This document shows, one piece after another, positions 28,593 through 61,865 of a stretch of DNA of 64,000 nt. A program made the translations under genes and the position numbers. Under the pieces are notes generated by a model that worked only from the letters and a program-made list of their open reading frames with translations, was not told the DNA's origin and ran no database searches. Within the stretch, counting starts at the first letter, position 1, and every line of letters starts with the position of its first letter. This DNA comes from Selaginella moellendorffii (lineage: Eukaryota; Plantae; Lycopodiophyta), in the NCBI RefSeq assembly GCF_000143415.4, contig NW_003314272.1:1274184-1338183 (forward strand). Direction: 5' to 3'.

Positions 28593-30681
28593 GTTGAGTT
28601 TTTTGTGGATTCTTTCTAAAAGCTGATAAAGTTTCACTGAAATGAGATATGCATTTTTCCTTGTCGGCATCCATGTGCACAGGCTTCGCAAGCATCACGA
28701 GCGCAGCCGGGTTGCCAGGACTGAGCTTGAGAATCTCTTTTGCTGCTCTGTTTATCTGAGAAGAATCGGTAGAGCTCCTGAGCAGGGACATCCAGTCGAG
28801 CGCATCAGCCTCGTAAGGCATGCTCCACACGAGCTCCTCGGCCTCACGAAAGTATTTCGCTCGGGAAAGCAAGTCCACCATGCACGAGTAGTGCTGCTTG
28901 CTGGCTTCGAGGCCGTAGTCGAAGCTCATGGACGCAAAAAAAGACTTTCCAGAGTAGAGCTTGCCATCGTGACTACACGCAATGAGCACGGACGCAAAGC
29001 ACGCGTCGTTGGGAGTATTCACCAAGTTGATCGAGCAAAAAATCCGCGGAGCTTCGCCCCAGCGGCCACTATGGCAGTAGGCCGCGAGGAGAGATCCCCA
29101 CGACACAACGTCGCCGCTCTCTGGCTTGCGATGGAACAGTCGACGAGCACTCGCGAGGTAGCCGAGCTGAGCGTAGGCCGCGAGCATCACGTTCCAGCAC
29201 ACAGTGTCTCGCTGGGGAATCACGTCGAAAACTTCTCTTGCCTCTCGGATCTGCCCGCTTCGAATGTAAGCCACGAGCAAGCAAGTCCACGAGACGCTGT
29301 TTGGCTGCTCGCCACCGGGTATGGAATCCAGAACTCTCTTCGAATCGCGGGCATGGCCTTTGTTAGAGTACGCGGACAGAAGAGCTGTCCAGGAAACCAA
29401 GCTCCGCTCCGGCATCTCGGTGAAGGCCTTTCTAGCCTCCTCGATATGCCCTCTCCGGGCATACGCATCCAGCCTCGTGTTCCAGGTGACGAGGTCTCGC
29501 TCCGGCATCGCCGAGAACATGGCTTCCACGGCTTCCATCTCCACGTTTTCGCAGCGAGCAAGCGCCGTGACCATGGAGTTCCAGGACACAATGTTCCTCT
29601 GTGGCATTCGCCGGAACACGGCTCTTGCTTTCTCGATATGCCCGATGTGGGCATATCCACTCAGCAAGGAGTTCCAGGACACGAGATTACGCTCTATCAT
29701 CTCATCAAATGTGAGCTCTAGAGCCTCAATGATTCCAGCCCGTGCATAGAGCGCTAGCATGCAATTGCCAGAGACTAGATCGTGGAAGGGCATTCGAGTG
29801 CTAAAGAAAATCTCAGCTTTGTGGCGGTGCGCGCTTTGGGAGTACGCTGCCAGCATAGAGTTCCAAGAGACGATGTCGCGCTCCTCCATTTCAGCGAATA
29901 CACGAGCCGCCTTCTCGACTTCCCGTGCCTGAACAAATGCCGCAAGCAAAGAGTTCCACGAAACCAAATCCCTCTCTGGCATCATCGTATAAAAAATTAT
30001 CACTGCTTGATCTATGCCTTTCGAGGAATACGCGGATAGAAGGCAATTCCACGAGAACATATTCCTTTCTGGCATTGTATCAAACACCTCCTTGGCCTCT
30101 TCCAAATGTCCAGACTGGGCAAGTGCCGAGACTAATAACGTTCCAGACACTAAGTCCCTTGATGGCATTTCGTCGTAGATTCTTTTGGCATCTAGAATCA
30201 TCTTGCTTCCACAGTAAGCAGCTAGCATTGACGTCCATGAGACCATGTCCCTCATGGGCATCTCGTCAAATATTTTCTTTGCAGATTCAATGTGGCCGTT
30301 CTGGGCATAAGCAGAGAGCAGTGATGTCCACGACACCAAGTCATGCTCCGGACTTTGGACAAAAACCCTCCAAGCATCGACCAGTTGCCCATTCTTGAGG
30401 TAAGCATCCAGCATCAAGTACCAGGAGAAAGCATCTTTGGAATCGATGGAATCAAAAACTTGTCGTGCTAGAGCAGGACTTCCAACACGTCCGTACATGC
30501 GAATGAGCTTGTTGTGGATCCGAACGTCCACCGCAGTGTGGGTTTTGCCAAGAGTGTGGCTACTGATGTACTGGTGGATGTTCCTGGCATCCTCTAACCC
30601 ATTGCAAGAATCGATGAGCTTGAAACACTCGTTCCTATTGAAGTTGCCACCCTTGATGAGCTCCACACAAGTTCTACACAT
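28579..30681 (-). CDS. PLS/SS-class PPR protein with E-type extension, 700 aa
   Basis: Intronless; many 31-aa repeats; HYSCMVDLLSRA...MPYEADALDWMSLL. Confidence 0.94.
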   Translation of the reverse strand: MCRTCVELIKGGNFNRNECFKLIDSCNGLEDARNIHQYISSHTLGKTHTAVDVRIHNKLIRMYGRVGSPALARQVFDSIDSKDAFSWYLMLDAYLKNGQLVDAWRVFVQSPEHDLVSWTSLLSAYAQNGHIESAKKIFDEMPMRDMVSWTSMLAAYCGSKMILDAKRIYDEMPSRDLVSGTLLVSALAQSGHLEEAKEVFDTMPERNMFSWNCLLSAYSSKGIDQAVIIFYTMMPERDLVSWNSLLAAFVQAREVEKAARVFAEMEERDIVSWNSMLAAYSQSAHRHKAEIFFSTRMPFHDLVSGNCMLALYARAGIIEALELTFDEMIERNLVSWNSLLSGYAHIGHIEKARAVFRRMPQRNIVSWNSMVTALARCENVEMEAVEAMFSAMPERDLVTWNTRLDAYARRGHIEEARKAFTEMPERSLVSWTALLSAYSNKGHARDSKRVLDSIPGGEQPNSVSWTCLLVAYIRSGQIREAREVFDVIPQRDTVCWNVMLAAYAQLGYLASARRLFHRKPESGDVVSWGSLLAAYCHSGRWGEAPRIFCSINLVNTPNDACFASVLIACSHDGKLYSGKSFFASMSFDYGLEASKQHYSCMVDLLSRAKYFREAEELVWSMPYEADALDWMSLLRSSTDSSQINRAAKEILKLSPGNPAALVMLAKPVHMDADKEKCISHFSETLSAFRKNPQKTQLSNC

Positions 30682-30739
30682 TAGAAAACTTGAAAGCTTT
30701 ATTTCGGTTTGTGGATCTTAGCATGCTTCATCGCAAGAT

Positions 30740-31746
30740 CTACAGAACAATCCAAATTCCATGACCAGACTCGCCATCATTCACTCCATAACGAGAACTA
30801 ATGAAGTGGACCTTGAGGTTGTTTGGAACGCACAGCTTGAGGATCTCAAGGTAGCTCACAAGCTCGGCATTGCCAGAAGCCACAGCGTTTCTCATCACAA
30901 CGTCGTAGTAATGCGTCACCTCGCGTTCCTTCTCCTGGATCATCGCACAGGTTCTGTCCACCGATTCCTGGAGCGTGTTGATGCTGGGAATCCAAGAGCA
31001 ACTGCAAGGACGCGATGCTTCTCAGTGGCTTTTTGGCGCGCAGCTCCGCGGGAAAGGAGATAACGTCGTTGACAAGGAGGACGTGGTCGTTGATGGCATT
31101 CTGGAGCGCCAGGTAGTCCCGCGACTCCAAATCGCTGTCTGGGAGCGCAATCTCCAGCGACATCTCGATGAATGGGAAGCAGGGGAGGAGGAAGCAATCG
31201 AGCCTCCTGCGGGCTCGACCGTCAACGCCGATTGTGCTAGAGAAAGGACGCTCCGGTCCATGGAGGCAGCGTAGGGCCTCCATCTGCGCGACCACACCCG
31301 GGGAGCCATGGATGATCGCAGGCGCGGAATGAGGTCCGCGCAGAACTCGAGCGATGGATGGACTGGATCGCGATGTGGGTGCGCCCCGTGGAGGATGCCC
31401 TGGAAAGTCTCCAGGAACTCCTCCCGGGGGGCGCCGCTGGGGGACTCGTCCTCGAGGAGATCATCCAGCATGATCGCGTTCCAAACCACGCGAACTCGGT
31501 GGATCCGCACGGCACGAGCATGCTCATGTAGAGCGGGATTCGCATGCGCTCCAGGGAGAGCTTTTGGGCATCGCTCATGCTGGGATTGATGAATGGGAAT
31601 GCCCACTCGTTCGCGAGCTTGGCAACGAGCTTGTGGTCGGGATGCCAGGCGCTGGAGGGGATGGAGCAGCGAATGGGCCGTAAATAGAACCTCTTTAGCC
31701 CCAGGAGGTGTTCCATGGCGGGAATCTTCTCCACGGCAAGTGCCAT
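30740..31746 (-). pseudogene. Microbial-type terpene synthase (MTPSL) pseudogene, copy A
   Basis: Near-identical to 44401-45441 but with several indels (~30990 +1; ~31212 ~-10; ~31275-31285; ~31473 +5; ~31497 ~-20) that scatter the protein over different frames. Confidence 0.92.
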
Positions 31747-31996
31747 GACCATTAGGAAGTTCGTGGAGGGCATTTTATAGTCGCCATATGGCAGAGTTTT
31801 GTGGGGTGATATCGAATGCTTGAAAATGCTATCGCAGTGGCTCGATTGTCATTGTACATCCCAGACGAAACATGGGGCGGCGGGACTATTGAAAGAAAAG
31901 TTTCATGCTCGTGTTTTCTCACCCCTCGTTGAAAAAACCGATCGATCCATTGTATTTAAGAAGGTGGCAGTCCAGTGTTACTAGCAGAAAAGAGAG
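31747..31996. promoter_or_regulatory. 250-bp putative bidirectional promoter between MTPSL-A and P450-A
   Basis: Divergent ATGs. CTATAAAA on the minus strand at ~31773-31780; TATTTAA on the plus strand at ~31953. Both are retained in copy B. Confidence 0.6.
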
Positions 31997-33559
31997 ATGG
32001 ATCTCACACTTAGTGTCGTTGTAAGCTCTCTCCTCCTCCTTTTTATCCTGGCCGTCGTGATAATCAGCTACAAGACTTCTCCACCAGGGCCATGGGGATT
32101 GCCCTTGATTGGCCACCTCCACTTGCTAGCGAGAATGCCCCTCCACCGAGCGCTGCAATCCATGTCACAAAAGCACGGCCCCATTGTGTCCTTGAGCCTG
32201 GGAATGAGGCCAGCGATCCTAATATCAGCGCCAGCTCTGGCAAGAGAGCTCTTCACCTCGCAGGATGTGAATTTTCCATCCAAGCCATATACGAGTGTCT
32301 CAGAGCACATAGGCTACAACTTTAGAAGCATCGGGACTGCCCCTTATGGCGAGTACTACAGCAGCATCCGGAAGCTGTGCCTGACGGAGCTCTTCACCGC
32401 CAGGAATATCGATTCGTTTTCATGGATTCGAAGAGAAGAGCTCTCGCATCTATTGAGTGCAATTCTCAGCAGGGCCAGCCATGGGCAGGCGCTGGATTTG
32501 AGGAAGACCCTGTCGGTGTTCACATTCAACAGCATAACCGGCGCCCTCATGAGCAAACGGTACCTCAGCCACGATACCGGTGCGGCTAGCTCAAAGGAGG
32601 CCATGGAGTTCAAGAATTGGTTAATCGAAGTGTTGCAGCTTGTTATGGAGCCCTCTTTGAGCAACTTCGTGCCTTGGTACTTGAGATGGCTTGACTGGAA
32701 GACTCCTGGATTGAGACGCCTTCATGCAAAGCTGGATAAGTTCTTGCAAATGGTTGTGGAAGAACACAAGAAGAGCACCCGAGAGCAGAAGGACTTCCTT
32801 GACATCCTGCTCAAGGCTTTCGGAGAGGAGGAAGCTTATGCAAAAGCTAATCTGTTGGTACGTGCGTGAGGATGAAGAACAAGATAGTGCTTCTGACATT
32901 CATATTCTTTCTTTCAGGACTTGATGGTGGCAGGAACTGAAACTTCCGTCACTGGGACCGAGTGGCTTATGGCAGCAGTGATCCAGGAGCCCCGGATCCT
33001 GAAAAAAGCCCAGCAAGAGCTTCACGATGCCGTGGGCAACAGGCGGATGGTGCAAGAATCAGACCTCTCCAAGCTCGGCTACCTCGACGCCATCATCAAG
33101 GAGTCACTCAGGCGCTACCCAATAGTCCCGATCTACATCCGCGAGTGCCAAGGCCAAGCGTCAAAACTCGGGGGCTACGACGTCCCAAAAGGAACCATCG
33201 TGATCGTCAACTCGTGGGCGCTGGGAATGGACCCCGTGGTGTGGGAGAATCCCACACAATTCTTGCCGGAACGCTTCCTCGCGAGCTCCATCGACATCAA
33301 AGGCCAGGACTTTGAACTCCTTCCATTTGGATCTGGGCGGAGGAGATGCCCAGGGATGCCCTTGGGCCTAAGAACCATGAAGCTGCTCGTGGCAAATCTC
33401 ATACATGGCTTTGACTGGAGTGTGGAGCCTGGGAAGATCCAATCCATGGAGGATTGCTTCAAATCTACTTGCATCATGAAGCATCCACTGCGGCCAGTGG
33501 TTACTCCAAGGCTGCACAAAGATGCCTACACTACCCAAATACATGATTTCTTCATATGA
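31997..33559 (+). CDS. Cytochrome P450, CYP71 clan (A-type), copy A, intact ~500 aa; intron 32858-32917
   Basis: TM anchor, PPGPWGLPLIGHLHLL, AGTETS (I helix), KESLR, PERF, PFGSGRRRCPG heme motif; single intron before the I helix, typical of the CYP71 clan. Confidence 0.95.
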
Positions 33560-33954
33560 TAAATTTTAATTTAGCTTTTTGCGAGATCCAAATGTACAAT
33601 TACAAAATTATATACTAATATTAGTGTAGTGGAATTTTGGTAATTAATATTAACGTAGTGGAATTTTAGTACCTGTCGGATTGATTTCAATTTAAACCAT
33701 TCACTTGAGCTAGGGTTTTTGGATTAATTAATATATACATTTTTTATATTCCCTTTTTCATATCCCTAAGGAGTGTTTGGATTTGGGATTTTGGTTTAGA
33801 TTTAACTTTAGTATCATCTAGATCTAATTTTTTCCATTTCCTTTCTTTTATTTATTTCTTTTAAAATTTTGGTTTAGATTTAACTTTTCCATTGTTTAGA
33901 TCTCCTTTTCCTTTTAGTTTTTTTCACTTCTCTTCTTTTACTCTTTCTTTTTTA

Positions 33955-34166
33955 TTCATCTTCATAGTAGAGCAGTAGTTTTCTTCTCTTTTGACTCTGG
34001 AGCAATATTCATCTTCATAGTAGAGTAGTAGTTTTCTTCTCTTTTGACTCTGGAGCAATATTCATCTTCATAGTAGAGCAGTAGTTTTCTTCTCTTTTGA
34101 CTCTGGAGCAATATTCATCTTCATAGTAAAGTAGTAGTTTTCTTCTCTTTTGACTCTAGAGCAACA
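33955..34166. repeat. 53-bp tandem repeat x4 in the retroelement leader
   Basis: Unit TTCATCTTCATAGTAGAGCAGTAGTTTTCTTCTCTTTTGACTCTGGAGCAATA. The inverted sister element has one copy (~41350-41405). Confidence 0.92.
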
Positions 34167-34913
34167 TTTGATGCAATTGCTTGATGCTATATGATTGCAA
34201 TTGAACAACCAAACTTAGTTGATGGCGGCATTCATGGCATGTGGTACAACTCCTCCTACTCTTGATGCTAATCCTCACGTTCGGCTGGAGTTCTTTTATG
34301 GGAATCCTAGAGATGATGTGTACCATTGGTTCGATCATTTCACGATGATTGCTATATATCATTCTTGGGATGATGCTCGACGTTTGCATGAATTTCCCAT
34401 GTGTCTCCAAGGGATGGTGTTGGAATGGTACAATGGTTTGAGTGCAGCCACTCGTAGGGATTGGAGTGTTCTCCCAAACATCTTCAAACGCGTTTACAAA
34501 TATGCTGATGATTGTGATGATGCCTTCTAACAATTGCATCGTTTTTGTCAAAGGCCATCTGAGTCTATAATGCAATTTGGTGTTAGTTTCTGAAGCCTCT
34601 TGCTTCATGCAGAGTTAAATATGTTGAAGCGGATCAAGTTGGGAATGTTATAGCTAACACTTCATCAAGATCTTGTTGAACTTGTGCATGCATTTGCTCC
34701 AACCACCCTTGATAATGCTCTTCGCTTGGCACAATGTTATAAAATATCGCCTTTTCCACTTCTCGTTGCATGTCCTTTAGCTCCACTTTCTGTGGGCAAT
34801 GGTCCTATTTCAATGAAAGTTGATGTTGCTGCTGCTCGAGTCCAAAGACAAGTGCGAGGATGTGGTCGTAGTTATGATGTTCATTGCTAAGTGTGTGATG
34901 AAGTTAGTCACAC

Positions 34914-35381
34914 TGTAGTGTATATGATCATGGGATGAGATTTGGATATACTGTCACCGTGGATCCTTGGAACCTTAGGGGATAAATAGGGATAAAATAG
35001 CCACTAAGGGCTCTCTCATCAAGCAATTGCCCCAGTTAGCTTAAGAGGAGAAAGATAAGGTGTGCTACATGTGGTATTAGAACAAATGGCACGGAAGGAT
35101 TGGTACATTCAGTGCGGAAATGGAGGTGTTGGTTCCTCTTGGCTTTGGTTCCTTTTAGCTCAATGGGGGTTGTTATTCAATAGTCAATAAGGACATTGAC
35201 ATCTCTGAAGGGGGGGTGAGTGTAGCACATATGATCATGGGATGAGATTTGGATATACTGTCACCGTGGACCTTTGAAACCTTAAAGGATAAATAAGGAT
35301 AAAATAACCACTAAGGGCTCTCTCATCAAGCAATTGCCCCTTTTCCAATTGGCTTAAGGGAGAGAGATAAAGTGCATTACA
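34914..35381 (+). mobile_element. TRIM (terminal-repeat retrotransposon in miniature), 468 bp
   Basis: LTR1 34914-35069 and LTR2 35221-35381 (TG...CA), PBS-like TGGTATTAGAAC, PPT GAAGGGGGGG, TSD CACAC/CACAT. Confidence 0.88.
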
Positions 35382-36697
35382 CACATTTATCGACGTTGTT
35401 AGTGTTTTTCAAATTGGCAACCTCCATTTCTTGGATGGAGAATTTGGCATCAATAATGTTTTGTTAGTGTTATTACAGTGGAAGGTTTGGACACCAAGAT
35501 GCATCCGGGAAACGAGGAATCACCCAAGTAATGGAGGAACCTTGCACGAATAAGTTAGTGACCCCTCCATCTTTCTTGCAAGAGTATTATCAAGGGGTTC
35601 ACTTAGCACCAGTTCATCTAGTGTTTACTTTCCAAGTTCGTTTTTATAATAAAAGGTCTTCTATTATTCTCTCCGTGTTAGTTGATACAGGTTTGAATTT
35701 ATCTTTTATTGTTTGACCTGTTGCCACATATTGCCATCTACATTTGCATTGTGTGGCAGAGCCAGTTTTCATTCTTTATGGCAACGGCTGTACACATACA
35801 TGTGCACTGGATGAGGTGGACCTAGTTGTGGGTATAGGCAATCTTAAGCTTGAGTTGCAGTCATTGTGGGTGGTGCCAAGTCAAACTTTTGACTTCATCC
35901 TTGGTATGGATTGATTGCAACATAATTATGCCAAATGTGACTTTGAGGCTTCTCCCCCTTGTCTCATACTTCCTTATATTTCATCCATTCCTTTCACTTC
36001 CATACCTTTTCGTCCCTTTGCTTATACCTCTACTTCAATTACTTTTGTTTCCTTATTACTTCCTCCTATGTTTCCGTGTTGTTCCACTTTTCCCTTTTCC
36101 GATCCCTTTGATAATCTTTGTATTGTAGCGGTTGACTAGTTCATGAAAGAGTATGGCGATCTCTTTGATTTGAGGTATTGTCTGGGGCCAAGATTGCCAC
36201 ATGTCATCCAATTCTAACCAGGGATGCTTGTCTAATCAAAGTTCATGTTTGTTATTAGTCACTCAAAGAGATCAAGATTTTACATGCAAACATCAAAAAG
36301 ATGTTGAAAAAGGGTATTATTCTAAAGTTGTGGAGTCCTTAGGCATGTGAATCTCATCTGGTGATAATGCTTGAAGGGAGTATTCATTTCTGCATCAATT
36401 ATTATCCATTAAATGAAGTGACGATCCCGAATGTGTACCCTCTTCCTCACACTGTTGATCTTTTGGATCGTCTGGGGAGAAGTCATTGGTTCACCAAGCT
36501 AGATCTTGCTTTTATGTATTGGCAAGTACCGATGGCCGAAAAAGATATTCCTAAGACTGCTTTTTGTACATTTTTTAGTTTGTATAAATTCTTGGTGATG
36601 CTGTTTGGTTTGTAAAATGCCCTAGCAACTTTCCAGCGGATGATGGATGAGGTTCTTTGTGATATGCTAGAGGTAACTGCTAACTTCATTAATGATA

Positions 36698-36891
36698 TGT
36701 AAGCAACCAAAGGGAACGACTTGAGAGATGATCCATGGGGTTCAAATATAGAGGGAAAGGGCCCATGAACAAGAGTGCACCCCCTTTTCCAATCGGTTAA
36801 GGGTCTTGGGATAGTTGGGGTTAAGCGTCCTTGGGTTTGAATAGTACTGGGCTGGGTGACCTCCCGGGAAGTCCAAATTCAAGAGCTTACA
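36698..36891. mobile_element. 194-bp solo LTR containing a 5S rRNA-derived segment (Cassandra-like)
   Basis: Termini TGTAAGC...GCTTACA, perfect TSD TGATA (36693-36697 / 36892-36896); 36820-36874 matches the plant 5S rRNA internal control region. Confidence 0.85.
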
Positions 36892-37316
36892 TGATATCTT
36901 GATCCACTCGGAGGGGACATGGGAGGAACACATCCCATGATGTTTGTAAAGTGTTAGATTGGCTATGGGACGTTGGTTTAATACTGAAGAGGTTGAAGTG
37001 TGTGTTTGGGTCCAAAGACATGACTTATCTTGGGTATTATATTTCTCATGGGTTTGCAAGTTGATCCTGACAAGCTTGTGGTGTGAGACACAAATCCCTT
37101 AGCCCCAAAGTGGAGCCAAAAGGGTGCCATGTGGTAGTGGCCGAAGCAAAAGCCAAACAAGCATAATACATTTGGACTAAAAGCTTCGACTTGAAAAGTC
37201 GAGAGTAGGAGTGGAACTCCCAATGAAGGGCTCGAGGAACGAGTTCGAAGCAAGCAATAAGTGAATCTCTAGAAAAGGGACACAAAAGGACCAATATATA
37301 ACATATAGAAGTGTCA

Positions 37317-37590
37317 AGATGGACCCGAGAGGGAATCCAAGGAGTTTGAGATGGACCCGAGAGGGAATCCAAGGAGTTCGAGATGGACCCGAGATGGAGT
37401 CCAAGATGGAGTCTAAGATGGAGTCCAAGATGGATCTGAGATGGATCCAAGATGGAGTCTGAGATGGAGTTTGAGATGGAACCGAGACTGAGACTGAGAC
37501 CGAGACCGAGATCGAGACTGAGTTTGAGACTGAGACCAAGACTGAGTCTGAGACCGAGACAGAGACCGAGTCCGAGTCCGAGTTTGAGTG
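37317..37590. repeat. Minisatellite/microsatellite tract (GAGATGGACCC/GAGATGGAGTC and GAGACY units) inside a probable further nested insertion (~37083-37715)
   Basis: Visible 12-bp and 6-bp periodicity; the host integrase sequence resumes at ~37716. Confidence 0.8.
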
Positions 37591-38619
37591 CAAATACTAA
37601 TATAGGTTGTTGGGTGAAAGCCCAAAGTGATCGGTGCAAGGGATTCTAAAAGTATAGTAAGGAGAGTGTGGGGGTTGGACCCTAATGGAGCCAATTTGGC
37701 CAGAAAAGGCCAGTCTGATGTCTCGGTTGGGGATACACCACACTTTCACAAGTGTTTATCATGCACAGTCAGACGATTTAGTGGAACAACTCGTTCGAAT
37801 GTTCAAAGGGATGATCGCGAAGTACGTGAACTTTCAGCATTTGGATTGGGATGGTTATTTGCTATCTTTTCAGTATACATATATCACAGGAGTGTAGAGT
37901 TCTATTGATGCTTCACCATATAAACTCTTGTATGGTCATGATCTAATATTATAAACGAAGCTAGGTTTACCTTTGCAATTGCCATGAGTTGCCGATACTA
38001 GGTCATGGGATCAGTAATTGATGAGCATCCTTCCACTTGCCCGAGTAGAGTCTGTTGAACACTTAAGTCGCATACAAGTGGGACAACAACAGTGCTACAA
38101 CTCCCATCATCATCCACCTACAGAGTATTAAATGGATGACTTAGCGTTAATACATTTTCCGCATGGTTTATTTAAGGGGCTCCTTGCTCAATAGAAAGGA
38201 CTGTATCAGATGTTGAGGCAAATTGGACCACAAGTTTATGAGGTTTGGCATGATGTCCAATAGGCCGATCCTCTAGAAATTGTGTATATGCAACGGTTGA
38301 AATGCTTTATACAAAGGGATCAAGAATAGTTGGTACCACCTATAGATCCACTAATGCCTCCTCCTAACGTTGCACTAGATCTCAACTCGTTTATAAGAGA
38401 ACCTTGATAGTCTTCCATTATTCCAAGAGGAGGGGATGATGTGAGGTCTAAGTGTACAGCTATGATGCCATATACTAATATTAGCATAGTGGGATTTTGG
38501 TAGCCGTCAGATTGGTTTCAATCCAGACCACTTGCTCCTATATATAAGCTAGGGTTTTTGGGCTAATTGATATACACATTTTCTATATTCCCTTTCCATA
38601 TACCATGCATATACAAAAA

Positions 38620-41600
38620 ATATACATATCAATTAGCCCAAAAACCCTAGTGTTCGTCAAATACTAATCCCATGACCTAGTATCGGCAGCTCATGGCAAT
38701 CACGAAGGTAAATATAGCTTCGTTTATAATATTGGATCATAACCATACAAGAGTTTATATGGTGAAGCATCAATAGAACTCTATACTCTTGTGATATATG
38801 CATACTGAAAAGACAGCAAATAACCATCCTAATCCAAATGCTGAAAGTTCACGTATTTCACAATCATCCCTTTGAATGTCCAAACAAGTTATTCTACCAA
38901 ATCGCTGACTGTGGATGATAAACACTTGTGAGAGTGTGGTGTATCCCCAACCGAGACGTCAAAACATGAAATGCCTTAGCCATAAATGCTGGACCATTAT
39001 CCAAAAAAATCTATAGGAACACCACTCAATTGAGGAGGAAGTATCTAACAGCAGTTGCAAAAGTGCTAGCAAGAGCATTAACTTCCACAAGTAGTTAGAA
39101 GCAATAATATTGCCAGCAGTCGATCGTGGAAAAGGTCCCATAAGTTCAAATGCCACCAACTCAAACGAATGGGAAACTGCAATTGACGCCAATCGTCCTT
39201 CCGCAACATAAAGGGAGTATTACAAGCTTGACACCAAACGTAGCTACGCACAACATCATGTCGCATCTCCAGCCAGTAGAAAGACTTACACAAATTCTCG
39301 GTCACATGACGATGTCCCATATACTTACCTAGAACAAAAGAATCATGGTAAGCATAGAGAAACTGTGGAATAAGATTGAGGGCACCACTAGCCATAAATG
39401 ATCATCAGGATCCATTCCCACAAAATAAAGAAGGTCGTTTTTAAGGCGATATTGAGAATGTAAATGCTAGAATGGTAAGTCATCAGTAAATCATGCAAGA
39501 TTTTCAAACTTCTAGAAGCCTTTGAATCCACGGCTCAATCTTTTAAACTTTATGAACCTCATCAAGAGAAGGTAGTTCTTTTTTTGTACCTTGTGGACAC
39601 TAAATGTCAAATACAGCAACCGCCAATGGCATAGAATCCTCGTCTAGAAAATCCATAGATGCTAAAACAATAGTTTCGTCAAAAATATGAGAAGAGAGCG
39701 AAGAAGGAAGAGGAGCTTGAGAAAGGGTGTCAACATCAGCCATAGAACTTCCCGGGCGATGAACAACATCAAAATCATATATCTGAAGTTTCAAAGCCCA
39801 CCGAACAGTACGACCAATGAGATTCTTCGGTTTTAATAATGAAGTAATGACAACATGATCACCTTTTAGTAACGTCCAAGAACCATATAGATATGCATCA
39901 AGTTTATCAAAACCCCAAACTGTTGCTAAACACTCCTTCTTTGTCATGGAGTAGTTCACCTCTGCTAGTTGTAATGTACAGCTGATGTATGCAATGGGAT
40001 AGTACTGACCAAGAACACTCGGGCTCTATTGCATCAACACACCTCCAAGACCAATATCAGAAGCATCCACACACAAAATGAAAGGTTGAGTGTACTTAGG
40101 ATATGCCAAAACTGGAGGAGTCATCAATAGCTCTTTGAGATTTATGAATGCCCGCTCACAATCCACAAACCAAATGAAAGATGACATTGATGAGTTTAGC
40201 AACACTCGCAACGGTGCAGTGCAATCAAAAAGATGATCCACAAAACAATTGAAATACTGCACTTTGCCTAAGAAGTATTGCACATCATTCACACACTTCA
40301 GAGTAGGAAACTTTACAACAACCACATATAAACAACTAAATTTTCCATTCTACTGGAAAATCCCCTCCTCTCAAAATGATAGAAGACCATCAAAGTTCTC
40401 TTATAAATGAGCTGGGATCTGGAAGAACATTAGGAGGAGGCATCGGTGGATCTGTATGTGGTACTAATTGTTCTTGATCCCTGTCGAGGGCTAGAGCAGC
40501 TCAAGAATAAGGCTTGGTCGAAGAGGGCTTCCTCCTTTTTTTGGTTAGGGAATATTCTGCTGGAAAGGGGGTGTGTCTAGAGGTTGACAAGAGGAGGGAT
40601 GGCCATTTTCTAGGCATAGCATATATGTAGAGTGGAGTAAAATAAAAAAGAAGGTTCTTGGAAAGAACCTCAAGTTCTTGGAAGGATGCCTCATTCAATA
40701 GCCTTGGAGCGCATGGAGTGAAGGTTGGCAATGTAGTGGCGACTACAGTTGTTTGAAGAGTGCATCACAGCGAGGATCGCTTAAGATCAATCAATTTGTG
40801 TGAGTTGTCTAACTTGTGGGCAGCCCTAAGCTAGGTTGTTGGCAGAGGTCCTAGCAAAGGTCACCTACAAGGCTAAGGATGAGGCTAGGCAGCAATGATT
40901 CTCAACTTCGTTGATGTGTCATTGCCAGGAGTGACATCTTTTGGTGAGCGAAGCAAGTGTTAAGATTGTGGTAGAAGGGTGAGCACCCGGAAAAGCCAGG
41001 CTACCCTCACCAAATCAAGACTGTTCCTTCCTAGTGTTCAAGAGAATACTCCAATTCTCACAAGTGGCTAAGCTCAAACCATTGTACCACTATAGCACTA
41101 TCCCTTGGAAACACGTGGGAAACTCATGCAATGTCAAGCATCATCCCAAGAATGATATATGGTAATCATCATGAAGTGATCGAACCAATGGTACACATCA
41201 TCCCTAGGATTCTCATGAAAAAATTCTAGCCAAATACAAGGATTGGCACCAAGAGCAGGAGGAGTTGTACCACACGCCATAAATGCTGTTATCAATTGAG
41301 TTTAGTTGTTTAATTACAATCACATAGCATTAAGCAATTGCACCAACTGCTGCTCCAGAGTCAAAGGAGGAGGAGATTGCTACTCTGCCATAAAGATGAA
41401 TGAAAAGGAAATAGCAAAAAAAAAAAGAAATGAAAAAAAACTAAAAGGAAAGGGAGATCTAAACAATGCAAAAGTTAAATCTAAACCAAAATCTCGAAAA
41501 AAAATAACAAAAGAAAGGAAATGGAAAAAGCTAGATCTAGACAATGCAAAAGCTACATATAAACCAAAATCCTAAATCCAAACTCCTCAGGGATAATCAA

Positions 41601-41790
41601 AGATGCCCTTCAACTTCACCAATATGAGTGCATGGAATATGGAAAGGGATTATAGAAAATGTGTATATCAATTAGCCCAAACACTTTAACTTATATACAA
41701 GAATGAATAGTTTAGATTGAAACCAAACTGACAGCTACCAAAATCCCACTATATTAATATTAGTATACAGCATTGTAACTGTACCTCATA
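38620..41790 (-). mobile_element. Second degenerate, rearranged Ty3/gypsy element of the same family in opposite orientation
   Basis: LTR ~41630-41790 is the reverse complement of the LTR above; gag relic ~41080-41290; RT-connection/RNase H (PVLAYP, VDASDIGLGGVL, NYSMTKKECLA, RWALKLQIYDFDVVHRPG); 38655-38960 is the reverse complement of 37720-38030. Confidence 0.85.
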
Positions 41791-43990
41791 ATATCAATTA
41801 TTATATTTGATTTTATACACTCTATTAAACATTAGGAGAATTAAATTATATAAAAATTATAATTAAGAAGATATAGTGTAATATTTTATCATTTCAATCA
41901 GACTATAATTTAAATAGTTATATTTATCAATAATATATATGAATTACCTTATGAGTATTATTATTAATTTAATAAACTTTATAATCTTTAATTTTATAAT
42001 TCAGTTTTCTATACCTTTTATTAAAATAAATTATTTTTGGAATGTTAAAGCAATAGTTGCTTAATATCTAAAATTTATTCATTTCTCATAAGGTGATTTA
42101 GAAGAATACTTTAAGTTAATTAAGTAAGTTATAAAAGACAATAATGATAAATATTCATTTAACTAAGCATATAATGTGTTTAAAATTGTTTAAATTTAAA
42201 TTTTGAGTTCACAAGTAAAATAAATTATTAAAATACTATATATTATAATTAATGTTTAACTCTTAGTTCATATAAGTTTATGCATTTTTACATATAAGTA
42301 GTAGCTAGATGATATTTTTATATAAATAACTAAAGTATAAATATTTATATTTTAAAGTTATTTTTTCTCACCTTATCACTTTTATAATGAAATTATATTA
42401 TGTTTTTTAACAGTTACATATTAATAAATTAAATAAAATTTATAAAAACATTATTTAACTTTTAGGATGTCTATTTTATATGATGGATATTTTTTAACTA
42501 TCAATATATATATATAGCTCTATAATATATATTACTGAAGTTCCTCTCAACTTGCAATGTTTAATTAATATATGATATTCACACTCAATGAAGATATTAC
42601 TATTATTGTTAAACTTTATAATAATTATATTTACATTCTATATAGGCATTCTAAATCTTACTAACAATTGTATCAAAAAATTTAAATAAACACCTCTTTA
42701 ACTATCATATATATAAATAGCTTTTATTGCAAGAATTATTAATTTTTACATATTTAATGTTTGTTCCTAGTTGAAAATTTTACCAAATTTCTTGCCAAAA
42801 TAATATATAATTCATTAATTTTTTTCATTTGACATAGCAATTAAAGATTTTTATTTTATGGTTTTGGATGTTGTTGAGGGTTTTGCTACATTTACAAATT
42901 GCAATCATCACTAGTAAGTAAATACCAAAATCACTAAATCCATAATTGTAAACTAAGTAATATAACTTGAAGGAGTGTTATTGTGTTTGTACTAAATTAG
43001 TATTAAAGGCTAGAGGAACATGGATGCTCTAAATTCCACAAGAGAAAACTGTGATAAGACAAAGTTGATGTGATTATAATTATTTACAGCATTGGTTAAG
43101 AGAGTTTAGAAATTATAAACAATAAAAATCGTTAGATAGTAAAATATTCCAAAATATGTAAGCATATTCTAAATATACCTGCCGGACACTTTTCTGTTCA
43201 AACCTACCTGAAATTTTTGATAACGGCTTTTAAAAAAGGAAACGCTAAGACCTGAGCGACTGAGGGTGTCGCATAGCTGGGATGTGCGATGGGAGTGATA
43301 AACCTTAGCCTCTCCGACACTGTTTGTTTGTGGAGCGTCACGGTGTATTTTAAATGTAACAAGCTGGCGTTGTTTGCGAAGTTCCCGTGCTTTCTTGCGG
43401 ACCTGTGCCACTGTAATGGATGGCGTTATATGAACGATGTGTATTCCAAACGAAACATTTCACAAAAGCCATGATTTTTCGAACAAGATTTGCCAGGCAA
43501 ACAACAAACACATCAAGAAAAATACGATACCTCTCCCGTATCTCCAAGTCCGCAGCTCATGTCACTTTGGCCAAAACTCGGATTGAGACCTCGGGACGCA
43601 GGCATACTGCAAGCTTGGACGTTCCCCAGGAGCTTTGGACGGCCATTATTGCATTGTGTCACCAGCTAGCACCGTGATGCCAATTCCGAGATCACGTCAG
43701 CAGAGAGGAGAAAAATCATGTACACTCTGCCTCAAGATCGAAAGCCAAGAAACCAGGAAAGAGCATTTAACATTTTCTAACGCTGGGCCCCTTCTATAGC
43801 TCGCCGACGCGTAGCGCCAGGAAGGCATGAGACGTGTCGATCCACGATACACTCACCTCGTGTTTGATCCTAACCGCACGAAACTCCCGAATCTAAGAGC
43901 GAGATCCGGGGTAGAGATTTGATGAAGTGACTCAGTGGAGGACCAAAAGAATATGCTCTGGTTTGAACGCGAGAGAAGAAGCCCTAATGC

Positions 43991-44302
43991 ATGCTTCGCA
44001 CCTCCAAATGGGGGCGGCTCGCGCGCGCGGTGCTCCAGTCGCACAGCCTTGACCTCCGCGAGCAGGAGAACGCGTTCGCGAAGGTGGTGCGCGAATGCGG
44101 GCAGGAGCGGGATCTGGAGCGCGGGCGGAGGATCCATGCACAGATCCAGGACGCCGGCATCGCCTCCAACACATTCCTGGGCAATCTCCTCGTCCAGATG
44201 TATGGCCGCTGCGGCTGCTTCCACGGCGCGCGGGCGGCCTTCGATGCCATCCAGCGCCGGAATGTCTTCTCGTGGACGCTCATCGTCACTCGTTCCTATT
44301 GA
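43991..44302 (+). pseudogene. 5' fragment of a PPR gene truncated at the duplication breakpoint
   Basis: RECGQERDLERGRRIHAQI...NTFLGNLLVQMYGRCG...RNVFSWT. At 44287 the sequence switches to a copy of 30626 onward and stops. Confidence 0.85.
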
Positions 44303-44400
44303 AGTTGCCACCCTTAATGAGCTCCACACAAGTTCTACACATCAGAAAACTCGAAAGCTTTATTTCGGTTTGTGGATTTTAGCATGCTTCATCGCAAGAT

Positions 44401-45441
44401 CTACAGAACAATCCAAATTCCATGACCAGACTCGGCATCATTCACTCCATAACGAGAACTAATGAAGTGGAACTTGAGGTTGTTTGGAACGCACATCTTG
44501 AGGATCTGAAGGTAGCTCACAAGCTCGGCATTGCCAGAAGCCACAGCGTTCCTCATCACAACGTCGTAGTAATGCGTCACCTCGCGTTCCTTCTCCTGGA
44601 TCATTGCACAGGTCCTGTCCACCGAGTCCTGGAACGTGTTGACGCTGGGATCCAAGAGCAACTGCAAGGACGCGATGCTTCTCAGTGGCTTTTTGGCGCG
44701 CAGCTCCGCGGGGAAGGAGATAACGTCGTTGACAAGGAGGACGTGATCGTTGATGGCGTTCTGGAGCGCCAGGTAGTCCCGCGACTCCAAATCGCTGTCT
44801 GGGAGCGCAATCTCCAGCGACATCTCGATGAATGGGAAGCAGGGGAGGAGGAAGCAATCGAGCCTCCTGCGCGCCAAGTAGCTCTCGACCGTCGACGCCG
44901 ATTGTGCTAGAGAAAGGACGCTCCGGTCCATGGAGGCAGCGTAGGCCTCCATCTGCGCGACCCAGTGCGCGTACACCCGGGGAGCCATGGATGATCGCAG
45001 GCGCGGAATGAGGTCCGCGCAGAACTCGAGCGATGGATGGACTGGATCGCGATGTGGGTGTGTCCCATGGAGGATGCCCTGGAAAGTCTCCAGGAACTCC
45101 TCCCGGGGGGCGCCGCCGGGGGACTCGTCCTCGAGGAGATCATCCAGCATGGTTCCAAACCACGCGAACTTGCCGCAGAGGACGGCGCTCTCGGTGGATC
45201 CGCACGGCACGAGCATGCTCATGTAGAGCGGGATTCGCATGCGCTCCAGGGAGAGCTTTTGGGCATCGCTCATGCTGGGATTGATGAATGGGAATGCCCA
45301 CTCGTTCGCGAGCTTGGCAACCAGCTTGTGGTCGGGATGCCAGGCGCTGGAGGGGATGGAGCAGCGAATGGGCGGCAAATAGAACCTCTTCAGCCCCAGG
45401 AGGTGTTCCATGGCGGGAATCTTCTCCACAGCAAGTGCCAT
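44401..45441 (-). CDS. MTPSL: Microbial-type terpene synthase-like protein (MTPSL), copy B, intact 346 aa, intronless
   Basis: Alpha-domain-only size; Asp-rich LDDLLED, pyrophosphate-sensor RRR, NSE motif NDVISFPAE, C-terminal (F)HFISSRY equivalent to WxxxxxRY of bacterial/fungal class I terpene cyclases. Confidence 0.93.
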   Translation of the reverse strand: MALAVEKIPAMEHLLGLKRFYLPPIRCSIPSSAWHPDHKLVAKLANEWAFPFINPSMSDAQKLSLERMRIPLYMSMLVPCGSTESAVLCGKFAWFGTMLDDLLEDESPGGAPREEFLETFQGILHGTHPHRDPVHPSLEFCADLIPRLRSSMAPRVYAHWVAQMEAYAASMDRSVLSLAQSASTVESYLARRRLDCFLLPCFPFIEMSLEIALPDSDLESRDYLALQNAINDHVLLVNDVISFPAELRAKKPLRSIASLQLLLDPSVNTFQDSVDRTCAMIQEKEREVTHYYDVVMRNAVASGNAELVSYLQILKMCVPNNLKFHFISSRYGVNDAESGHGIWIVL

Positions 45442-45746
45442 GATCAGTAGGAGATTTAGATAATCGGGATTTTGGAGAACGACATTTTATAGTCATTTTT
45501 GTTACACTGGATCATGTTGGACATTGCTATTGGAGTGGCACGAATTCATATCGACTTTGTACTGAATGCTCGAAAATTCTATCGCAGTGGCTCGATGGTC
45601 ATTGTACATCCCAGACGAAACATCGGGCGGCTGGAATATTGAAAGAAAAGTTTCATGCTCGTGTTTTCTCACCCCTCGTTGAAAAAACTGATCGATCCAT
45701 TGTATTTAAGAAGGTGGCAGTCCAGTGTTACTAGCAGAAAAGAGAG
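45442..45746. promoter_or_regulatory. 305-bp putative bidirectional promoter between MTPSL-B and P450-B
   Basis: Divergent ATGs with conserved CTATAAAA (minus) and TATTTAA (plus). The MTPSL-proximal ~110 bp differ from copy A. Confidence 0.6.
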
Positions 45747-47306
45747 ATGGATGTTGTAAGCTCTCTCCTCCTCCTTTTTATCCTGGCCGTCGTGATAATC
45801 AGCTACAAATCCAGAGTGACTTCTCCACCAGGGCCATGGGGATTGCCCTTGATTGGCCACCTCCACTTGCTAGCGAGAATGCCCCTCCACCGAGCTCTGC
45901 AATCCATGTCACAAAAGCACGGCCCCATTGTGTCCTTGAGCCTGGGAATGAGGCCAGCGATTCTCATATCAGCTCCGGCTCTGGCAAGAGAGCTCTTCAC
46001 CTCGCAGGATGTGAATTTTCCATCCAAGCCATATATGAGTGTCGCAGAGCACATAGACTACAACTTTAGAAGCATCGGGACTGCCCCTTATGGCGAGTAC
46101 TACAGCAGCATCCGGAAGCTGTGCCTGACGGAGCTCTTCACCGCCAGGAACATCGATTCGTTTTCATGGATTCGAAGCGAAGAGCTCTCGCATCTATTGA
46201 GTGCAATTCTCAGCAGCGCCAGCCATGGGCAGGCGCTGGATTTGAGGAAGACCCTGTCGGTGTTCACATTCAACAGCATAACCGGCGCCCTCATGAGCAA
46301 ACGGTACCTCAGCCACGAGCATGCCGGTGCGGCTAGCTCAAAGGAGGCCATGGAGTTCAAGAATTTGGTATTCGAAGTCGTGCACTGTATTATGGACCCC
46401 TGTTTGAGCAACTTCGTGCCTTGGTACTTGAGATGGCTTGACTGGAAGACTCCTGGAATGAGACGCCTTCATGCAAAGGTGGATAAGTTCTTGCAAATGG
46501 TTGTGGAAGAACACAAGAAGAGCACCCGAGAGCACAAAGACTTCCTTGACATTCTGCTCGAGGCTTTTGGGGAGGAGGAAGCTTATGCAAAAGCCAATCT
46601 GTTGGTACGTGCGTGAGGATGAAGAACAAGATAGTGCTTCTGATATTCATATCCTTTCTTTCAGGACTTGATTATGGCAGGAACTGAAACTTCCGTCATT
46701 GGGACCGAGTGGCTCATGGCAGCAGTGATCCAGGAGCCGCGGATCCTGAAAAAAGCCCAGCAAGAGCTTCAAGATGCCGTGGGCAACAGGCGGATGGTGC
46801 AAGAATCAGACCTCTCCAAGCTCGGCTACCTCGACGCCATCATCAAGGAGTCATTCAGGCGTTACCCGGTTGTCCCGATCCACATCCGCGAGTGCCAAGG
46901 CCAAGCGTCAAAACTCGGGGGCTACGATGTCCTAAAAGGAACCATCGTGCTCGTCAACTCGTGGGCGCTGGGAATGGACCCCGTGGTGTGGGAGAATCCC
47001 ACACAGTTCTTGCCGGAACGCTTCCTTGCGAGCTTCATCGACATCAAAGGCCAGGACTTTGAGCTCCTTCCATTTGGATCCGGGCGAAGGAGATGCCCCG
47101 GGATGCCCCTGGGCCTAAGAACCGTGAAGCTGCTCGTGGCAAATCTCATACATGGCTTTGACTGGAGTGTGGAGCCCGGCTAGATCCAATCCATGGAGGA
47201 TTGCTTCAAAACTGCTTGCATCATGAAGCATCCACTGCAGCCAGTGGTTACTCCAAGGCTGCCCAAAGATGCCTACAACATGATTTCTCCATCTGATACG
47301 TCCTAA
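45747..47306 (+). pseudogene. Cytochrome P450 copy B with premature TAG at 47181-47183 (458 aa, lacks ~40 C-terminal residues); intron 46605-46664
   Basis: Paralog of 31997-33559. GAG CCT GGG AAG ATC in copy A reads GAG CCC GGC TAG ATC here; homologous sequence continues after the stop. Confidence 0.85.
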
Positions 47307-48289: not shown

Positions 48290-48485
48290 GCTTCAACTCA
48301 TAAGTGCTAGGAATGGACCTTACAATATAGGACAGCCAAAACACTTCCATTGACATCAAAGCTCAAAACTTTGAGCTCCTTCCATGGAAAAGATGCCCTA
48401 GGATGCCTTTAGGGAATTTCATCCATGAAGATTCAATCTATTGAGGATTGCTTTAGATCTGCTTGCTTTATGAAGCATGCAATAT
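48290..48485 (+). pseudogene. Decayed 3' fragment of a third related P450
   Basis: ...CTAGGAATGGACC...TCCATTGACATCAAAGCTCAAAACTTTGAGCTCCTTCCA...GAGGATTGCTTT...ATGAAGCAT aligns with the P450 C-terminal exon, with deletions. Confidence 0.75.
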
Positions 48486-48616
48486 GCTCCAAAGTTGCCT
48501 ATTAATTTAGGAAAATTATTTATAACTGAATATAGTAATAAATAAATATTATATGTCATTGATTCATACATACTATTTAGAAGGTCTAATAGTTGCCCTT
48601 AAATATGAGATGGACT

Positions 48617-61727: not shown

Positions 61728-61865
61728 CTTTTCATGTTGCTTGGCTTGTGACTGATCATATCATGTTTATTTATATGCTTTTGGCATCCGTGGCAGTGGG
61801 ACTCTTGCCAGATGTCGCTACACAGATACGTACTTACATGGTTAAAGATGATTGAAACTTTGTCA

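What the first reader, a model, noticed from the sequence alone, without database searches (positions are those of the whole stretch)
30740..47306. Head-to-head microbial-type terpene synthase + CYP71-clan P450 module: candidate two-gene terpenoid pathway, present twice
Seen in sequence: an MTPSL (minus) and a P450 (plus) diverge from ATGs only 250 bp (copy A) and 305 bp (copy B) apart, with a TATA-like box facing each way in both copies. Established: MTPSLs are alpha-domain class I cyclases of non-seed plants that resemble bacterial/fungal enzymes, and TPS-CYP pairs form the core of terpenoid gene clusters in angiosperms, with typical plant TPSs. Inference: a microbial-type cyclase has been coupled to a native plant A-type P450 on a shared promoter, making a minimal co-regulated module for an oxidised mono/sesquiterpenoid. 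I do not know of this locus being characterised as a pair, but I cannot search the literature.
Basis: partly seen in the sequence, partly recalled or inferred. Interest (0 to 1): 0.9.

Follow-up and report, generated by a model that had tools for sequence, protein, structure and literature searches.

The report
Duplicated spikemoss terpene synthase–P450 gene pair
In the spikemoss Selaginella moellendorffii, a bacterial-type terpene synthase gene and a plant P450 oxidase gene sit head-to-head 250–305 bp apart in two tandem copies, but each copy here has one broken partner and a shared pathway is plausible, not shown.

Summary
The window is S. moellendorffii scaffold GL377576.1. A 2.9-kb unit (30626-33530 and 44287-47277, about 94% identical) carries a microbial-type terpene synthase (MTPSL, minus strand) and a CYP71-clan P450 of the Selaginella family CYP797B (plus strand). 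Their ATGs are 250 and 305 bp apart, and TATA-like boxes face each way.

"Present twice" needs a caveat.
- MTPSL-A is a pseudogene with five frameshifting indels plus a 21-bp deletion.
- P450-B has a TAG about 36 codons before its normal end.
- So this haplotype keeps one intact MTPSL (B) and one intact P450 (A), 12.4 kb apart across retroelement debris.
- The other haplotype (GL377675.1) keeps a fully intact pair.

Other evidence:
- Both gene types evolve under purifying selection (dN/dS 0.26-0.43).
- Both appear in transcript-like contigs, and the P450 intron is spliced out in one run.
- Two of six other MTPSL loci also have an adjacent P450, but only as relics without a heme motif.

Co-regulation and a shared pathway remain untested. 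I rate it a credible candidate two-step sesquiterpenoid module in a birth-and-death cluster, and a new variant of known TPS-CYP pairs. The scan had already noted this stretch (s1-398802, s1-431218, s1-399047).

The parts
28579..30681 (-). PPR gene (700 aa). Its ATG lies 58 bp downstream of the MTPSL-A stop. It marks the proximal border of duplication unit A.
   Evidence: ORF; PPR Pfam families; annotated as a 700-aa gene in L007; transcript-like contigs run from the MTPSL into it.
30626..33530 (.). Duplication unit A (2.9 kb).
   Evidence: Self-BLAST, 93.8-94.3% identical to 44287-47277.
30740..31746 (-). MTPSL-A, a frameshifted pseudogene.
   Evidence: Indels +1, -10, +1, -10, +5 and -21 relative to copy B and both copies of the other haplotype. 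Annotated only as a 148-aa fragment (P0023).
31747..31996 (.). Divergent spacer A (250 bp). TATAAAA on the minus strand (31779-31773) and TATTTAA on the plus strand (31953-31959).
   Evidence: Sequence read; aligned with the other copies.
31997..33559 (+). P450-A, intact CYP797B-type gene. Exon 1 31997-32857, intron 32858-32917, exon 2 32918-33559; 500 aa.
   Evidence: The heme motif FGSGRRRCPG starts at 33326. 98.8% nucleotide identity to the 506-aa P450 of the other haplotype.
33600..43900 (.). Degenerate Ty3/gypsy-type retroelement fragments in both orientations, separating the two units.
   Evidence: RVT_1, RT_RNaseH and Integrase_H2C2 hits; inverted repeats; low GC.
44287..47277 (.). Duplication unit B (2.9 kb). 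It includes the first ~55 bp of the PPR coding sequence (44287-44342).
44401..45441 (-). MTPSL-B, an intact 346-aa class I alpha-domain terpene synthase.
   Evidence: PF19086. D100/D101, N238-D239-S242-E246 and R330-Y331 are conserved. Model pLDDT 87, pTM 0.89; best fold matches are bacterial and fungal class I synthases.
45442..45746 (.). Divergent spacer B (305 bp). TATAAAA on the minus strand (45491-45485) and TATTTAA on the plus strand (45703-45709).
   Evidence: No contig was laid on it in four runs.
45747..47306 (+). P450-B, with a premature stop. Exon 1 45747-46604, intron 46605-46664, exon 2 from 46665; TAG at 47181-47183, about 36 codons before the homologous end.
   Evidence: The intron is spliced out in a contig of run X1. 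The only run covering the place (X1) reads GGG AAG instead of GGC TAG.
48295..48496 (+). Short P450 C-terminal fragment (relic).
   Evidence: tblastn with P450-A.
62036..62455 (+). P450 fragment (41% identical to P450-A residues 221-353), next to a PPR gene (60024-61727, minus strand). The full CYP797B paralogue P0003 starts just past the window end.

Best explanation
This is a genuine divergent gene pair in the nuclear genome of Selaginella moellendorffii. One member is a microbial-type class I terpene synthase (MTPSL, allelic group of SELMODRAFT_429098). The other is a lineage-specific CYP71-clan P450 of family CYP797, subfamily B (the remnant on the other haplotype is named CYP797B16). The pair was tandemly duplicated as a 2.9-kb unit inside a local CYP797B/PPR array and is evolving by birth and death.

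In this haplotype the two copies decayed reciprocally. MTPSL-A is frameshifted and P450-B has a late nonsense codon. That leaves one intact synthase (B) and one intact P450 (A), 12.4 kb apart. The other haplotype still has an intact head-to-head pair.

Inferred mechanism: the MTPSL has no transit-peptide extension, so it would be cytosolic. It would ionise FPP (possibly GPP) through its Asp-rich and NSE metal sites to give one or more sesquiterpene or monoterpene scaffolds. The ER-anchored P450 would then hydroxylate a product.

Shown: gene identities, intact catalytic motifs, the duplication and decay pattern, purifying selection, and transcription and splicing. Inferred only: substrate, product, coupling of the two enzymes, and control by the shared spacer.
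For: - Organism and locus.
- Duplication and lesions.
- MTPSL identity. Its only relatives are SmMTPSLs (41% identity or less), fern MTPSLs and bacterial terpene synthases. All PDB sequence and fold matches are microbial class I synthases. The catalytic residues are conserved.
- P450 identity. The best PDB matches are CYP76AH, CYP76AK, CYP93C and CYP73A. It is 52-57% identical to the named CYP797B proteins. All signature motifs are present.
- Selection. MTPSL dN/dS is 0.26-0.42 among the three intact copies. P450 dN/dS is 0.36 (A vs B, dS 0.092) and 0.43 (A vs the other haplotype).
- An intact pair with a 247-bp spacer exists on the other haplotype.
- Transcript-like contigs. MTPSL contigs occur in 4 of 4 runs and P450 contigs in 2 of 4. 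The 60-nt intron is spliced out in X1. No contigs lie on the spacer or the outer flanks.
- MTPSL-P450 adjacency recurs at 2 of 6 other MTPSL loci, one of them head-to-head, with P450s of the same broad family.
- Characterised SmMTPSLs are multi-product mono- and sesquiterpene synthases (PMC7826640).
Against: - No unit in this window has both partners intact.
- The contigs laid on MTPSL-B carry the alleles of the other haplotype's copy, not those of MTPSL-B, so expression of MTPSL-B itself is not shown.
- Two runs have the MTPSL without the P450.
- On the other haplotype one MTPSL is kept intact beside a destroyed P450. At loci L003 and L008 the P450 neighbours lack the heme motif. MTPSLs are therefore retained without their adjacent P450.
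- The nearest P450 paralogue checked (P0003) has no MTPSL neighbour.
- Short intergenic distances are the rule in this genome, so 250-305 bp is weak evidence for co-regulation.
- No biochemical data exist for either protein.
Confidence: 0.55

Rival explanations
1. Coincidental neighbours. The MTPSL landed or was duplicated inside a tandem array of CYP797B genes in a compact genome. The two enzymes work in unrelated pathways, and the short divergent spacer simply reflects high gene density.
For: - CYP797B paralogues and fragments lie nearby on the same scaffold (48.3 kb, 62 kb and just past the window end).
- P0003 has no MTPSL neighbour.
- Intergenic gaps of 46-360 bp are common around here.
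- MTPSL contigs occur without P450 contigs in 2 of 4 runs.
- MTPSLs persist beside dead P450s.
Against: - Adjacency recurs at 2 of 6 other MTPSL loci, against about 1.8% expected per gene (PMC9937507). The P450s there belong to the same broad family.
- Reciprocal decay kept exactly one of each gene in this haplotype.
- Both genes are under purifying selection.
Confidence: 0.35
2. A decaying relic. The pair was once a working module but is now being lost across the population, so the intact-looking genes have little or no present function.
For: - MTPSL-A carries six indels, P450-B a nonsense codon, and the other haplotype's c1 P450 is reduced to fragments.
- Run X4 carries an expressed MTPSL allele with the same +1 insertion behind 44649 as the pseudogene.
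- The P450s at L003 and L008 are relics.
Against: - dN/dS is well below 1 for the intact copies.
- All catalytic motifs are intact in MTPSL-B, P450-A and the other haplotype's pair.
- Transcripts are present and spliced. A B-type P450 without the stop codon is seen in X1.
Confidence: 0.08
3. Assembly artefact. The two 'copies' are the two haplotypes of one locus wrongly joined in tandem.
For: The v1 assembly holds both haplotypes, and this region is polymorphic.
Against: - The other haplotype is assembled separately (GL377675.1) and itself carries two units.
- P450-A and P450-B differ by dS 0.09, far above the A-versus-allele value of 0.019.
- The units have different flanks and 10 kb of retroelement between them.
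- Both A-type and B-type P450 contigs occur in public runs.
Confidence: 0.02

Closest known systems
MpCPT5-MpMTPSL2 mini gene cluster of Marchantia polymorpha (bioRxiv 10.64898/2026.07.16.738752)
   Same: An MTPSL in a non-seed plant, paired head-to-head with a second terpenoid-pathway gene across a short spacer. In that case a shared bidirectional promoter was shown to drive co-expression.
   Different: The partner there is a cis-prenyltransferase acting upstream of the synthase, not a P450 acting downstream. Function was proven by knockouts and reporters. Here nothing is proven, and each copy in this window has one broken partner.
Terpene synthase-cytochrome P450 pair with a bidirectional promoter in Dictyostelium discoideum (discoidol to discodiene), as cited in the same preprint
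   Same: A microbial-type terpene synthase and a P450 that modifies its product, divergently arranged on one promoter. This is the architecture proposed here.
   Different: It is in an amoeba, not a plant, with a different P450 family, and it is biochemically demonstrated. I read only the preprint's description, not the primary paper.
TPS-CYP gene pairs and terpenoid gene clusters of angiosperms (my own knowledge, for example rice diterpenoid, Arabidopsis triterpene and Solanum clusters)
   Same: A scaffold-forming synthase next to CYP71-clan tailoring P450s. They originate by local duplication and show birth-and-death dynamics.
   Different: Those use typical beta-alpha or gamma-beta-alpha plant TPSs or oxidosqualene cyclases, usually span tens to hundreds of kb, and rarely share a spacer under 0.5 kb. 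Here the synthase is a single-domain microbial type and the P450 belongs to the lycophyte-specific family CYP797.
Characterised SmMTPSLs (SmMTPSL5, 15, 19, 23, 33, 37, 46, 47; PMC7826640)
   Same: Same gene family and species, with zero or one intron, about 320-370 aa and the DDxxD and NSE/DTE motifs. All made several mono- and sesquiterpenes from GPP and FPP in vitro.
   Different: The nearest SmMTPSL relatives of MTPSL-B are only 36-41% identical. MTPSL-B has not been assayed, and that paper mentions no P450 partner.

Membership tests
Microbial-type terpene synthase-like (MTPSL) | Single alpha-domain protein of about 320-420 aa, without the beta or gamma domains of typical plant TPSs | tested here: met
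   346 aa, with only PF19086 matched. The AlphaFold model is all-helical and single-domain, pLDDT 87 and pTM 0.89. It aligns over its whole length with about 300-345-residue microbial synthases, TM 0.72-0.83.
Microbial-type terpene synthase-like (MTPSL) | Class I metal-binding motifs (Asp-rich DDxxD/E, NSE/DTE triad) and the C-terminal RY pair | tested here: met
   D100-D101-L-L-E-D, N238-D239-x-x-S242-x-x-x-E246 and R330-Y331 are invariant or nearly invariant in a 21-sequence alignment.
Microbial-type terpene synthase-like (MTPSL) | Closer to bacterial or fungal terpene synthases than to typical plant TPSs | tested here: met
   An exhaustive HMMER search found only SmMTPSLs, fern MTPSLs and bacterial synthases among the hits I looked up. 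PDB sequence and fold hits are all bacterial or fungal.
Microbial-type terpene synthase-like (MTPSL) | Encoded in the nuclear genome of a non-seed plant, not in a contaminant | tested here: met
   The gene is embedded between plant PPR, P450 and other genes on a 2.9-Mb scaffold, and again on the allelic scaffold.
Microbial-type terpene synthase-like (MTPSL) | Terpene synthase activity on prenyl diphosphates | not testable with these tools
   Needs a recombinant enzyme assay.
CYP71-clan (A-type) plant P450, family CYP797 | P450 signature motifs: Pro-rich hinge, I-helix AGxE/DTS/T, ExxR, PERF, heme-binding FxxGxRxCxG | tested here: met
   PPGPWGLP, AGTETS, ESLRR, PERF and FGSGRRRCPG are all present in P450-A. 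PF00067 matches both exons.
CYP71-clan (A-type) plant P450, family CYP797 | Greatest similarity to CYP71-clan enzymes | tested here: met
   The top solved-structure matches are sugiol and ferruginol synthases (CYP76), isoflavone synthase (CYP93C) and C4H (CYP73A), ahead of animal and other-clan P450s. No clan-level tree was built.
CYP71-clan (A-type) plant P450, family CYP797 | At least 40% identity to named family members (at least 55% for the subfamily) | tested here: met
   52-57% identity to clusters holding CYP797B5, B7, B9, B13 and B20, and 40% to CYP797F1. The allelic remnant is named CYP797B16. Subfamily level is borderline.
Plant biosynthetic gene cluster / TPS-CYP pair | Physically adjacent, non-homologous biosynthetic genes | tested here: met
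   Spacers are 250 and 305 bp.
Plant biosynthetic gene cluster / TPS-CYP pair | All members of the unit intact | tested here: not met
   In this window MTPSL-A is frameshifted and P450-B has a premature stop. The feature is met only by unit c2 of the other haplotype.
Plant biosynthetic gene cluster / TPS-CYP pair | Co-expression of the members | tested here: inconclusive
   Both genes appear in contigs of runs X1 and X2, and only the MTPSL in X4 and X7. Contigs give no expression levels, and one call was allowed.
Plant biosynthetic gene cluster / TPS-CYP pair | Members catalyse steps of one pathway | not testable with these tools
   Needs co-expression assays and metabolite analysis.
Bidirectional promoter | Divergent genes less than 1 kb apart | tested here: met
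Bidirectional promoter | One regulatory region drives both genes | not testable with these tools
   Needs a dual-reporter assay and mapping of transcription start sites. The contigs do not define starts.

The most novel reading that the evidence does not exclude
The MTPSL/CYP797 divergent pair is an old, selected two-enzyme module: a microbial-type synthase recruited to a native plant P450 on a bidirectional promoter. Segmental duplication spread it through the S. moellendorffii genome (this locus, L008, L003), where it makes oxidised sesquiterpenoids. That would be the first MTPSL-P450 biosynthetic cluster in a plant, and a plant counterpart of the Dictyostelium TPS-P450 pair.
Probability: 0.22. 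Interest if true: 0.75.

Novelty: new variant of a known kind. Interest (0 to 1): 0.5.

Why it matters
MTPSLs are a second terpene synthase family, of microbial type, found in non-seed plants. Almost nothing is known about how their products are tailored. In the papers I could search, only one MTPSL gene cluster has been described, with a prenyltransferase in Marchantia. If the MTPSL and the CYP797B P450 act in sequence, this would be a minimal chimeric pathway made of a microbial-type scaffold enzyme and a lineage-specific plant oxidase. It would give a first function to the large, uncharacterised CYP797 family. It would also offer a compact system for studying how plant gene clusters are born, duplicated and lost, because several decay states are visible across two haplotypes and public samples.

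Tried and rejected
1. The word-index protein search with MTPSL-B found only its own 90% cluster. The exhaustive search was needed to reach paralogues.
2. Exact look-ups of P0025, P0026 and of MTPSL-B itself found no gene on record, so those loci could not be inspected. MTPSL-B appears to be unannotated in the v1 assembly.
3. The primary MTPSL papers (Li et al. 2012, PMC3437839; Jia et al. 2016, PMC5087002) are not held. I could not find the SmMTPSL number of this gene, nor check whether P450 neighbours were mentioned there. A search for SmMTPSL papers and a read of PMC7826640 gave no P450 link. The expression-atlas preprint does not discuss MTPSL/P450 neighbours.
4. I tested whether the P450s beside paralogous MTPSLs are the closest relatives of P450-A, which would indicate co-duplication of the pair. 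They are not. They are 37-45% identical to the whole CYP797 group and no closer to P450-A than to the other panel members, so co-duplication is neither shown nor excluded.
5. The Rfam gathering-threshold scan of 30-48 kb found nothing.
6. I considered haplotype mis-assembly as the source of the two copies and rejected it.
7. The bacterial promoter/terminator scanner was not used, because it does not apply to plant nuclear genes.


Full report
**What is there**

The window is Selaginella moellendorffii. The 346-aa ORF at 44401-45441 (minus strand) is 97% identical to SELMODRAFT_429098. A fragment model of the neighbouring pseudogene places the window on scaffold GL377576.1 of GCA_000143415.2, at roughly window coordinate + 1,274,183.

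A self-comparison shows one clean duplication: 30626-31757 and 31814-33530 match 44287-45452 and 45564-47277 at 93.8-94.3% identity. Each 2.9-kb unit has a terpene synthase on the minus strand and a P450 on the plus strand, with ATGs 250 bp (unit A) and 305 bp (unit B) apart. A TATAAAA faces the synthase and a TATTTAA faces the P450 in both units, and also in the allelic copies.

**State of the four genes**

- MTPSL-B is an intact, intronless ORF matching PF19086.
- MTPSL-A differs from B and from both allelic copies by +1, -10, +1, -10, +5 and -21 nt. It is a pseudogene, annotated only as a 148-aa fragment.
- P450-A is intact: exon 1 at 31997-32857, a 60-nt GT..AG intron, exon 2 at 32918-33559, 500 aa, with all P450 signatures.
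- P450-B has the same structure but reads GGC TAG where A reads GGG AAG (stop at 47181-47183). This removes about 36 C-terminal residues.

This haplotype therefore keeps one working-looking copy of each gene, 12.4 kb apart. Between them lie degenerate gypsy-type retroelement pieces in both orientations.

**The other haplotype**

Scaffold GL377675.1 (L001) has the same flanking genes (DHHA2, lipase, FPN1, EamA) and is 97% identical over 11 kb. It also has two units, arranged differently:

- c2 is a 506-aa P450 and a 346-aa MTPSL, both intact, with a 247-bp spacer. Its P450 is the allele of P450-A (98.8% nucleotide identity).
- c1 is an intact MTPSL (P0001) beside a P450 reduced to fragments, with about 350 bp inserted in the spacer.

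The locus is therefore structurally polymorphic and evolving by birth and death.

**What the proteins are**

An exhaustive HMMER search with MTPSL-B gave only 179 hits at E ≤ 0.001 among 1.84 billion representatives. The best are S. moellendorffii MTPSLs at 41% identity or less, including the named MTPSL13 and MTPSL30. After those come fern MTPSLs and bacterial synthases from Pseudomonas, Streptomyces and Pseudonocardia.

PDB sequence hits (VenA, caryolan-1-ol synthase, T-muurolol synthase, fungal Cop4, pentalenene synthase) are all microbial class I enzymes. So are the top 50 fold matches to a confident model (pLDDT 87, pTM 0.89, TM 0.72-0.83). D100/D101, N238-D239-S242-E246 and R330-Y331 are conserved. 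"Microbial-type alpha-domain class I cyclase" is confirmed.

For the P450, the best solved relatives are CYP76AH, CYP76AK, CYP93C and CYP73A, all in the CYP71 clan. Its closest paralogues (52-57% identity) are named CYP797B5, B7, B9, B13 and B20. The allelic remnant is CYP797B16. CYP797 is a Selaginella-specific expansion with no known function.

**Selection**

Among the three intact MTPSL copies dN/dS is 0.26-0.42, with 8-10 non-synonymous against 7-10 synonymous changes where neutrality predicts about 3.4:1. For the P450, A versus B gives dS 0.092 and dN/dS 0.36, and A versus its allele gives 0.43. Both genes have been constrained for most of the time since duplication, so the P450-B stop is recent. 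The MTPSL copies are much more alike (dS 0.03-0.04) than the P450 copies, which suggests gene conversion.

**Expression**

All four runs, from four studies, hold MTPSL contigs. X1 and X2 also hold P450 contigs. No run covers the spacer or the outer flanks. One X1 contig skips exactly the 60-nt intron, so X1 at least contains RNA.

Diagnostic sites give more detail:

- The MTPSL contigs are of the c2 type from the other haplotype, not MTPSL-B, and they continue into the PPR gene.
- X2's P450 contig is of the A/c2 type.
- X1's P450 contigs are B-type but read GGG AAG at the stop position.

The reference TAG is therefore allele-specific or possibly a reference error. X4 carries an MTPSL allele with the same +1 insertion behind 44649 as the pseudogene.

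These results show that both gene types are transcribed. They do not show co-regulation.

**Is the adjacency more than chance?**

P450s make up 0.89% of S. moellendorffii genes (PMC9937507). I examined six other MTPSL loci:

- L003 has a convergent P450 313 bp away.
- L008 has a head-to-head P450 fragment plus MTPSL, and a second MTPSL followed by a P450.
- L004, L005, L006 and L009 have none.

Two of six against about 1.8-3% expected gives P about 0.005-0.012. However, the P450s at L003 and L008 lack a heme-binding motif. They are also no closer to P450-A than to the other CYP797 members I compared. The nearest paralogue checked (P0003, just past the window end) has no MTPSL neighbour. So the association recurs, but MTPSLs clearly persist after their P450 neighbour dies.

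**Interpretation**

The most likely reading is a real MTPSL/CYP797B gene pair that may encode two steps: FPP to a sesquiterpene, then hydroxylation. This is inferred from family knowledge and from the in-vitro behaviour of other SmMTPSLs (PMC7826640).

In this haplotype the pair is split by reciprocal decay. I put about one chance in three on true metabolic coupling. The main rival is chance neighbourhood inside a CYP797B/PPR array in a compact genome.

**Comparison with known cases**

In the searchable literature I found no plant MTPSL-P450 pair. The closest published cases are two:

- the MpCPT5-MpMTPSL2 bidirectional pair in Marchantia;
- the Dictyostelium terpene synthase-P450 bidirectional pair that preprint cites.

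I therefore class this as a new variant of a known kind, still unproven.

**Earlier notes of the scan**

Earlier notes cover this same stretch (s1-398802, s1-431218, s1-399047), and my tests agree with their readings. Notes on other MTPSL/P450 neighbourhoods in this genome (s1-334485, s1-420466) fit what I saw at L003 and L008, but I could not match them to specific loci.

Noticed in passing
window 36699-36886: A ~190-bp insertion that is absent from the other haplotype (the L001 alignment breaks exactly here). It is flanked by a repeated ATGATAT and contains a sub-threshold 5S rRNA-like segment at 36801-36888 (32.5 bits against a gathering score of 38, E 7.7e-5).
   Followed up: partly
window 33600-43900: Retroelement debris in both orientations: RT on the plus strand at 36.4 kb, RNase H and integrase on the minus strand at 39.1-40.3 kb. 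Inverted repeats pair 33761-34473 with 41042-41595, and 37716-38027 with 38651-38961. A long simple-sequence tract lies at 37046-37694.
   Followed up: partly
window 28579-30742 and 44287-44342: The PPR gene's ATG (30681) lies only 58 bp downstream of the MTPSL-A stop on the same strand. Transcript-like contigs run across both genes. The first ~55 bp of the PPR coding sequence were copied with unit B, where they abut a PPR-like ORF on the opposite strand (43991-44302) that has no Pfam hit.
   Followed up: partly
window 60024-62455 and beyond 64000: A second PPR gene (minus strand, 567 aa) is followed about 300 bp later by a P450 fragment on the plus strand. This is the same layout as unit A but without an MTPSL between them. 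The full CYP797B gene P0003 starts about 130 bp past the window end. It suggests an older PPR-P450 repeat into which the MTPSL was added, or from which it was lost.
   Followed up: no
window 44401-45441 vs 45747-47306 (and L001): The divergences are discordant. MTPSL copies differ by dS 0.03-0.04, while P450-A and P450-B differ by dS 0.09, and the spacers are mosaics of A-type and B-type segments. This points to gene conversion or unequal crossing-over among the units.
   Followed up: partly
window 44649 (run X4) and 47180-47181 (run X1): Public samples carry intermediate alleles. One is an expressed MTPSL with just one of the pseudogene's indels (+1 A behind 44649). The other is a B-type P450 contig without the reference stop codon, whose 3' end beyond 47307 matches neither the window nor L001.
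   Followed up: partly
L008 (GL377664.1) 6500-13300: A decayed interleaved array: P450 fragment (minus strand) / MTPSL (plus) head-to-head about 150 bp apart, then P450 scraps, a second MTPSL and a P450 without a heme motif. It looks like a further relic of the same kind of unit.
   Followed up: partly
L005 (GL377714.1): A tandem array of four MTPSL genes (366, 366, 323 and 366 aa) with no P450 within 10 kb. The lengths match those published for SmMTPSL5/47 and SmMTPSL46, but identity was not verified.
   Followed up: no
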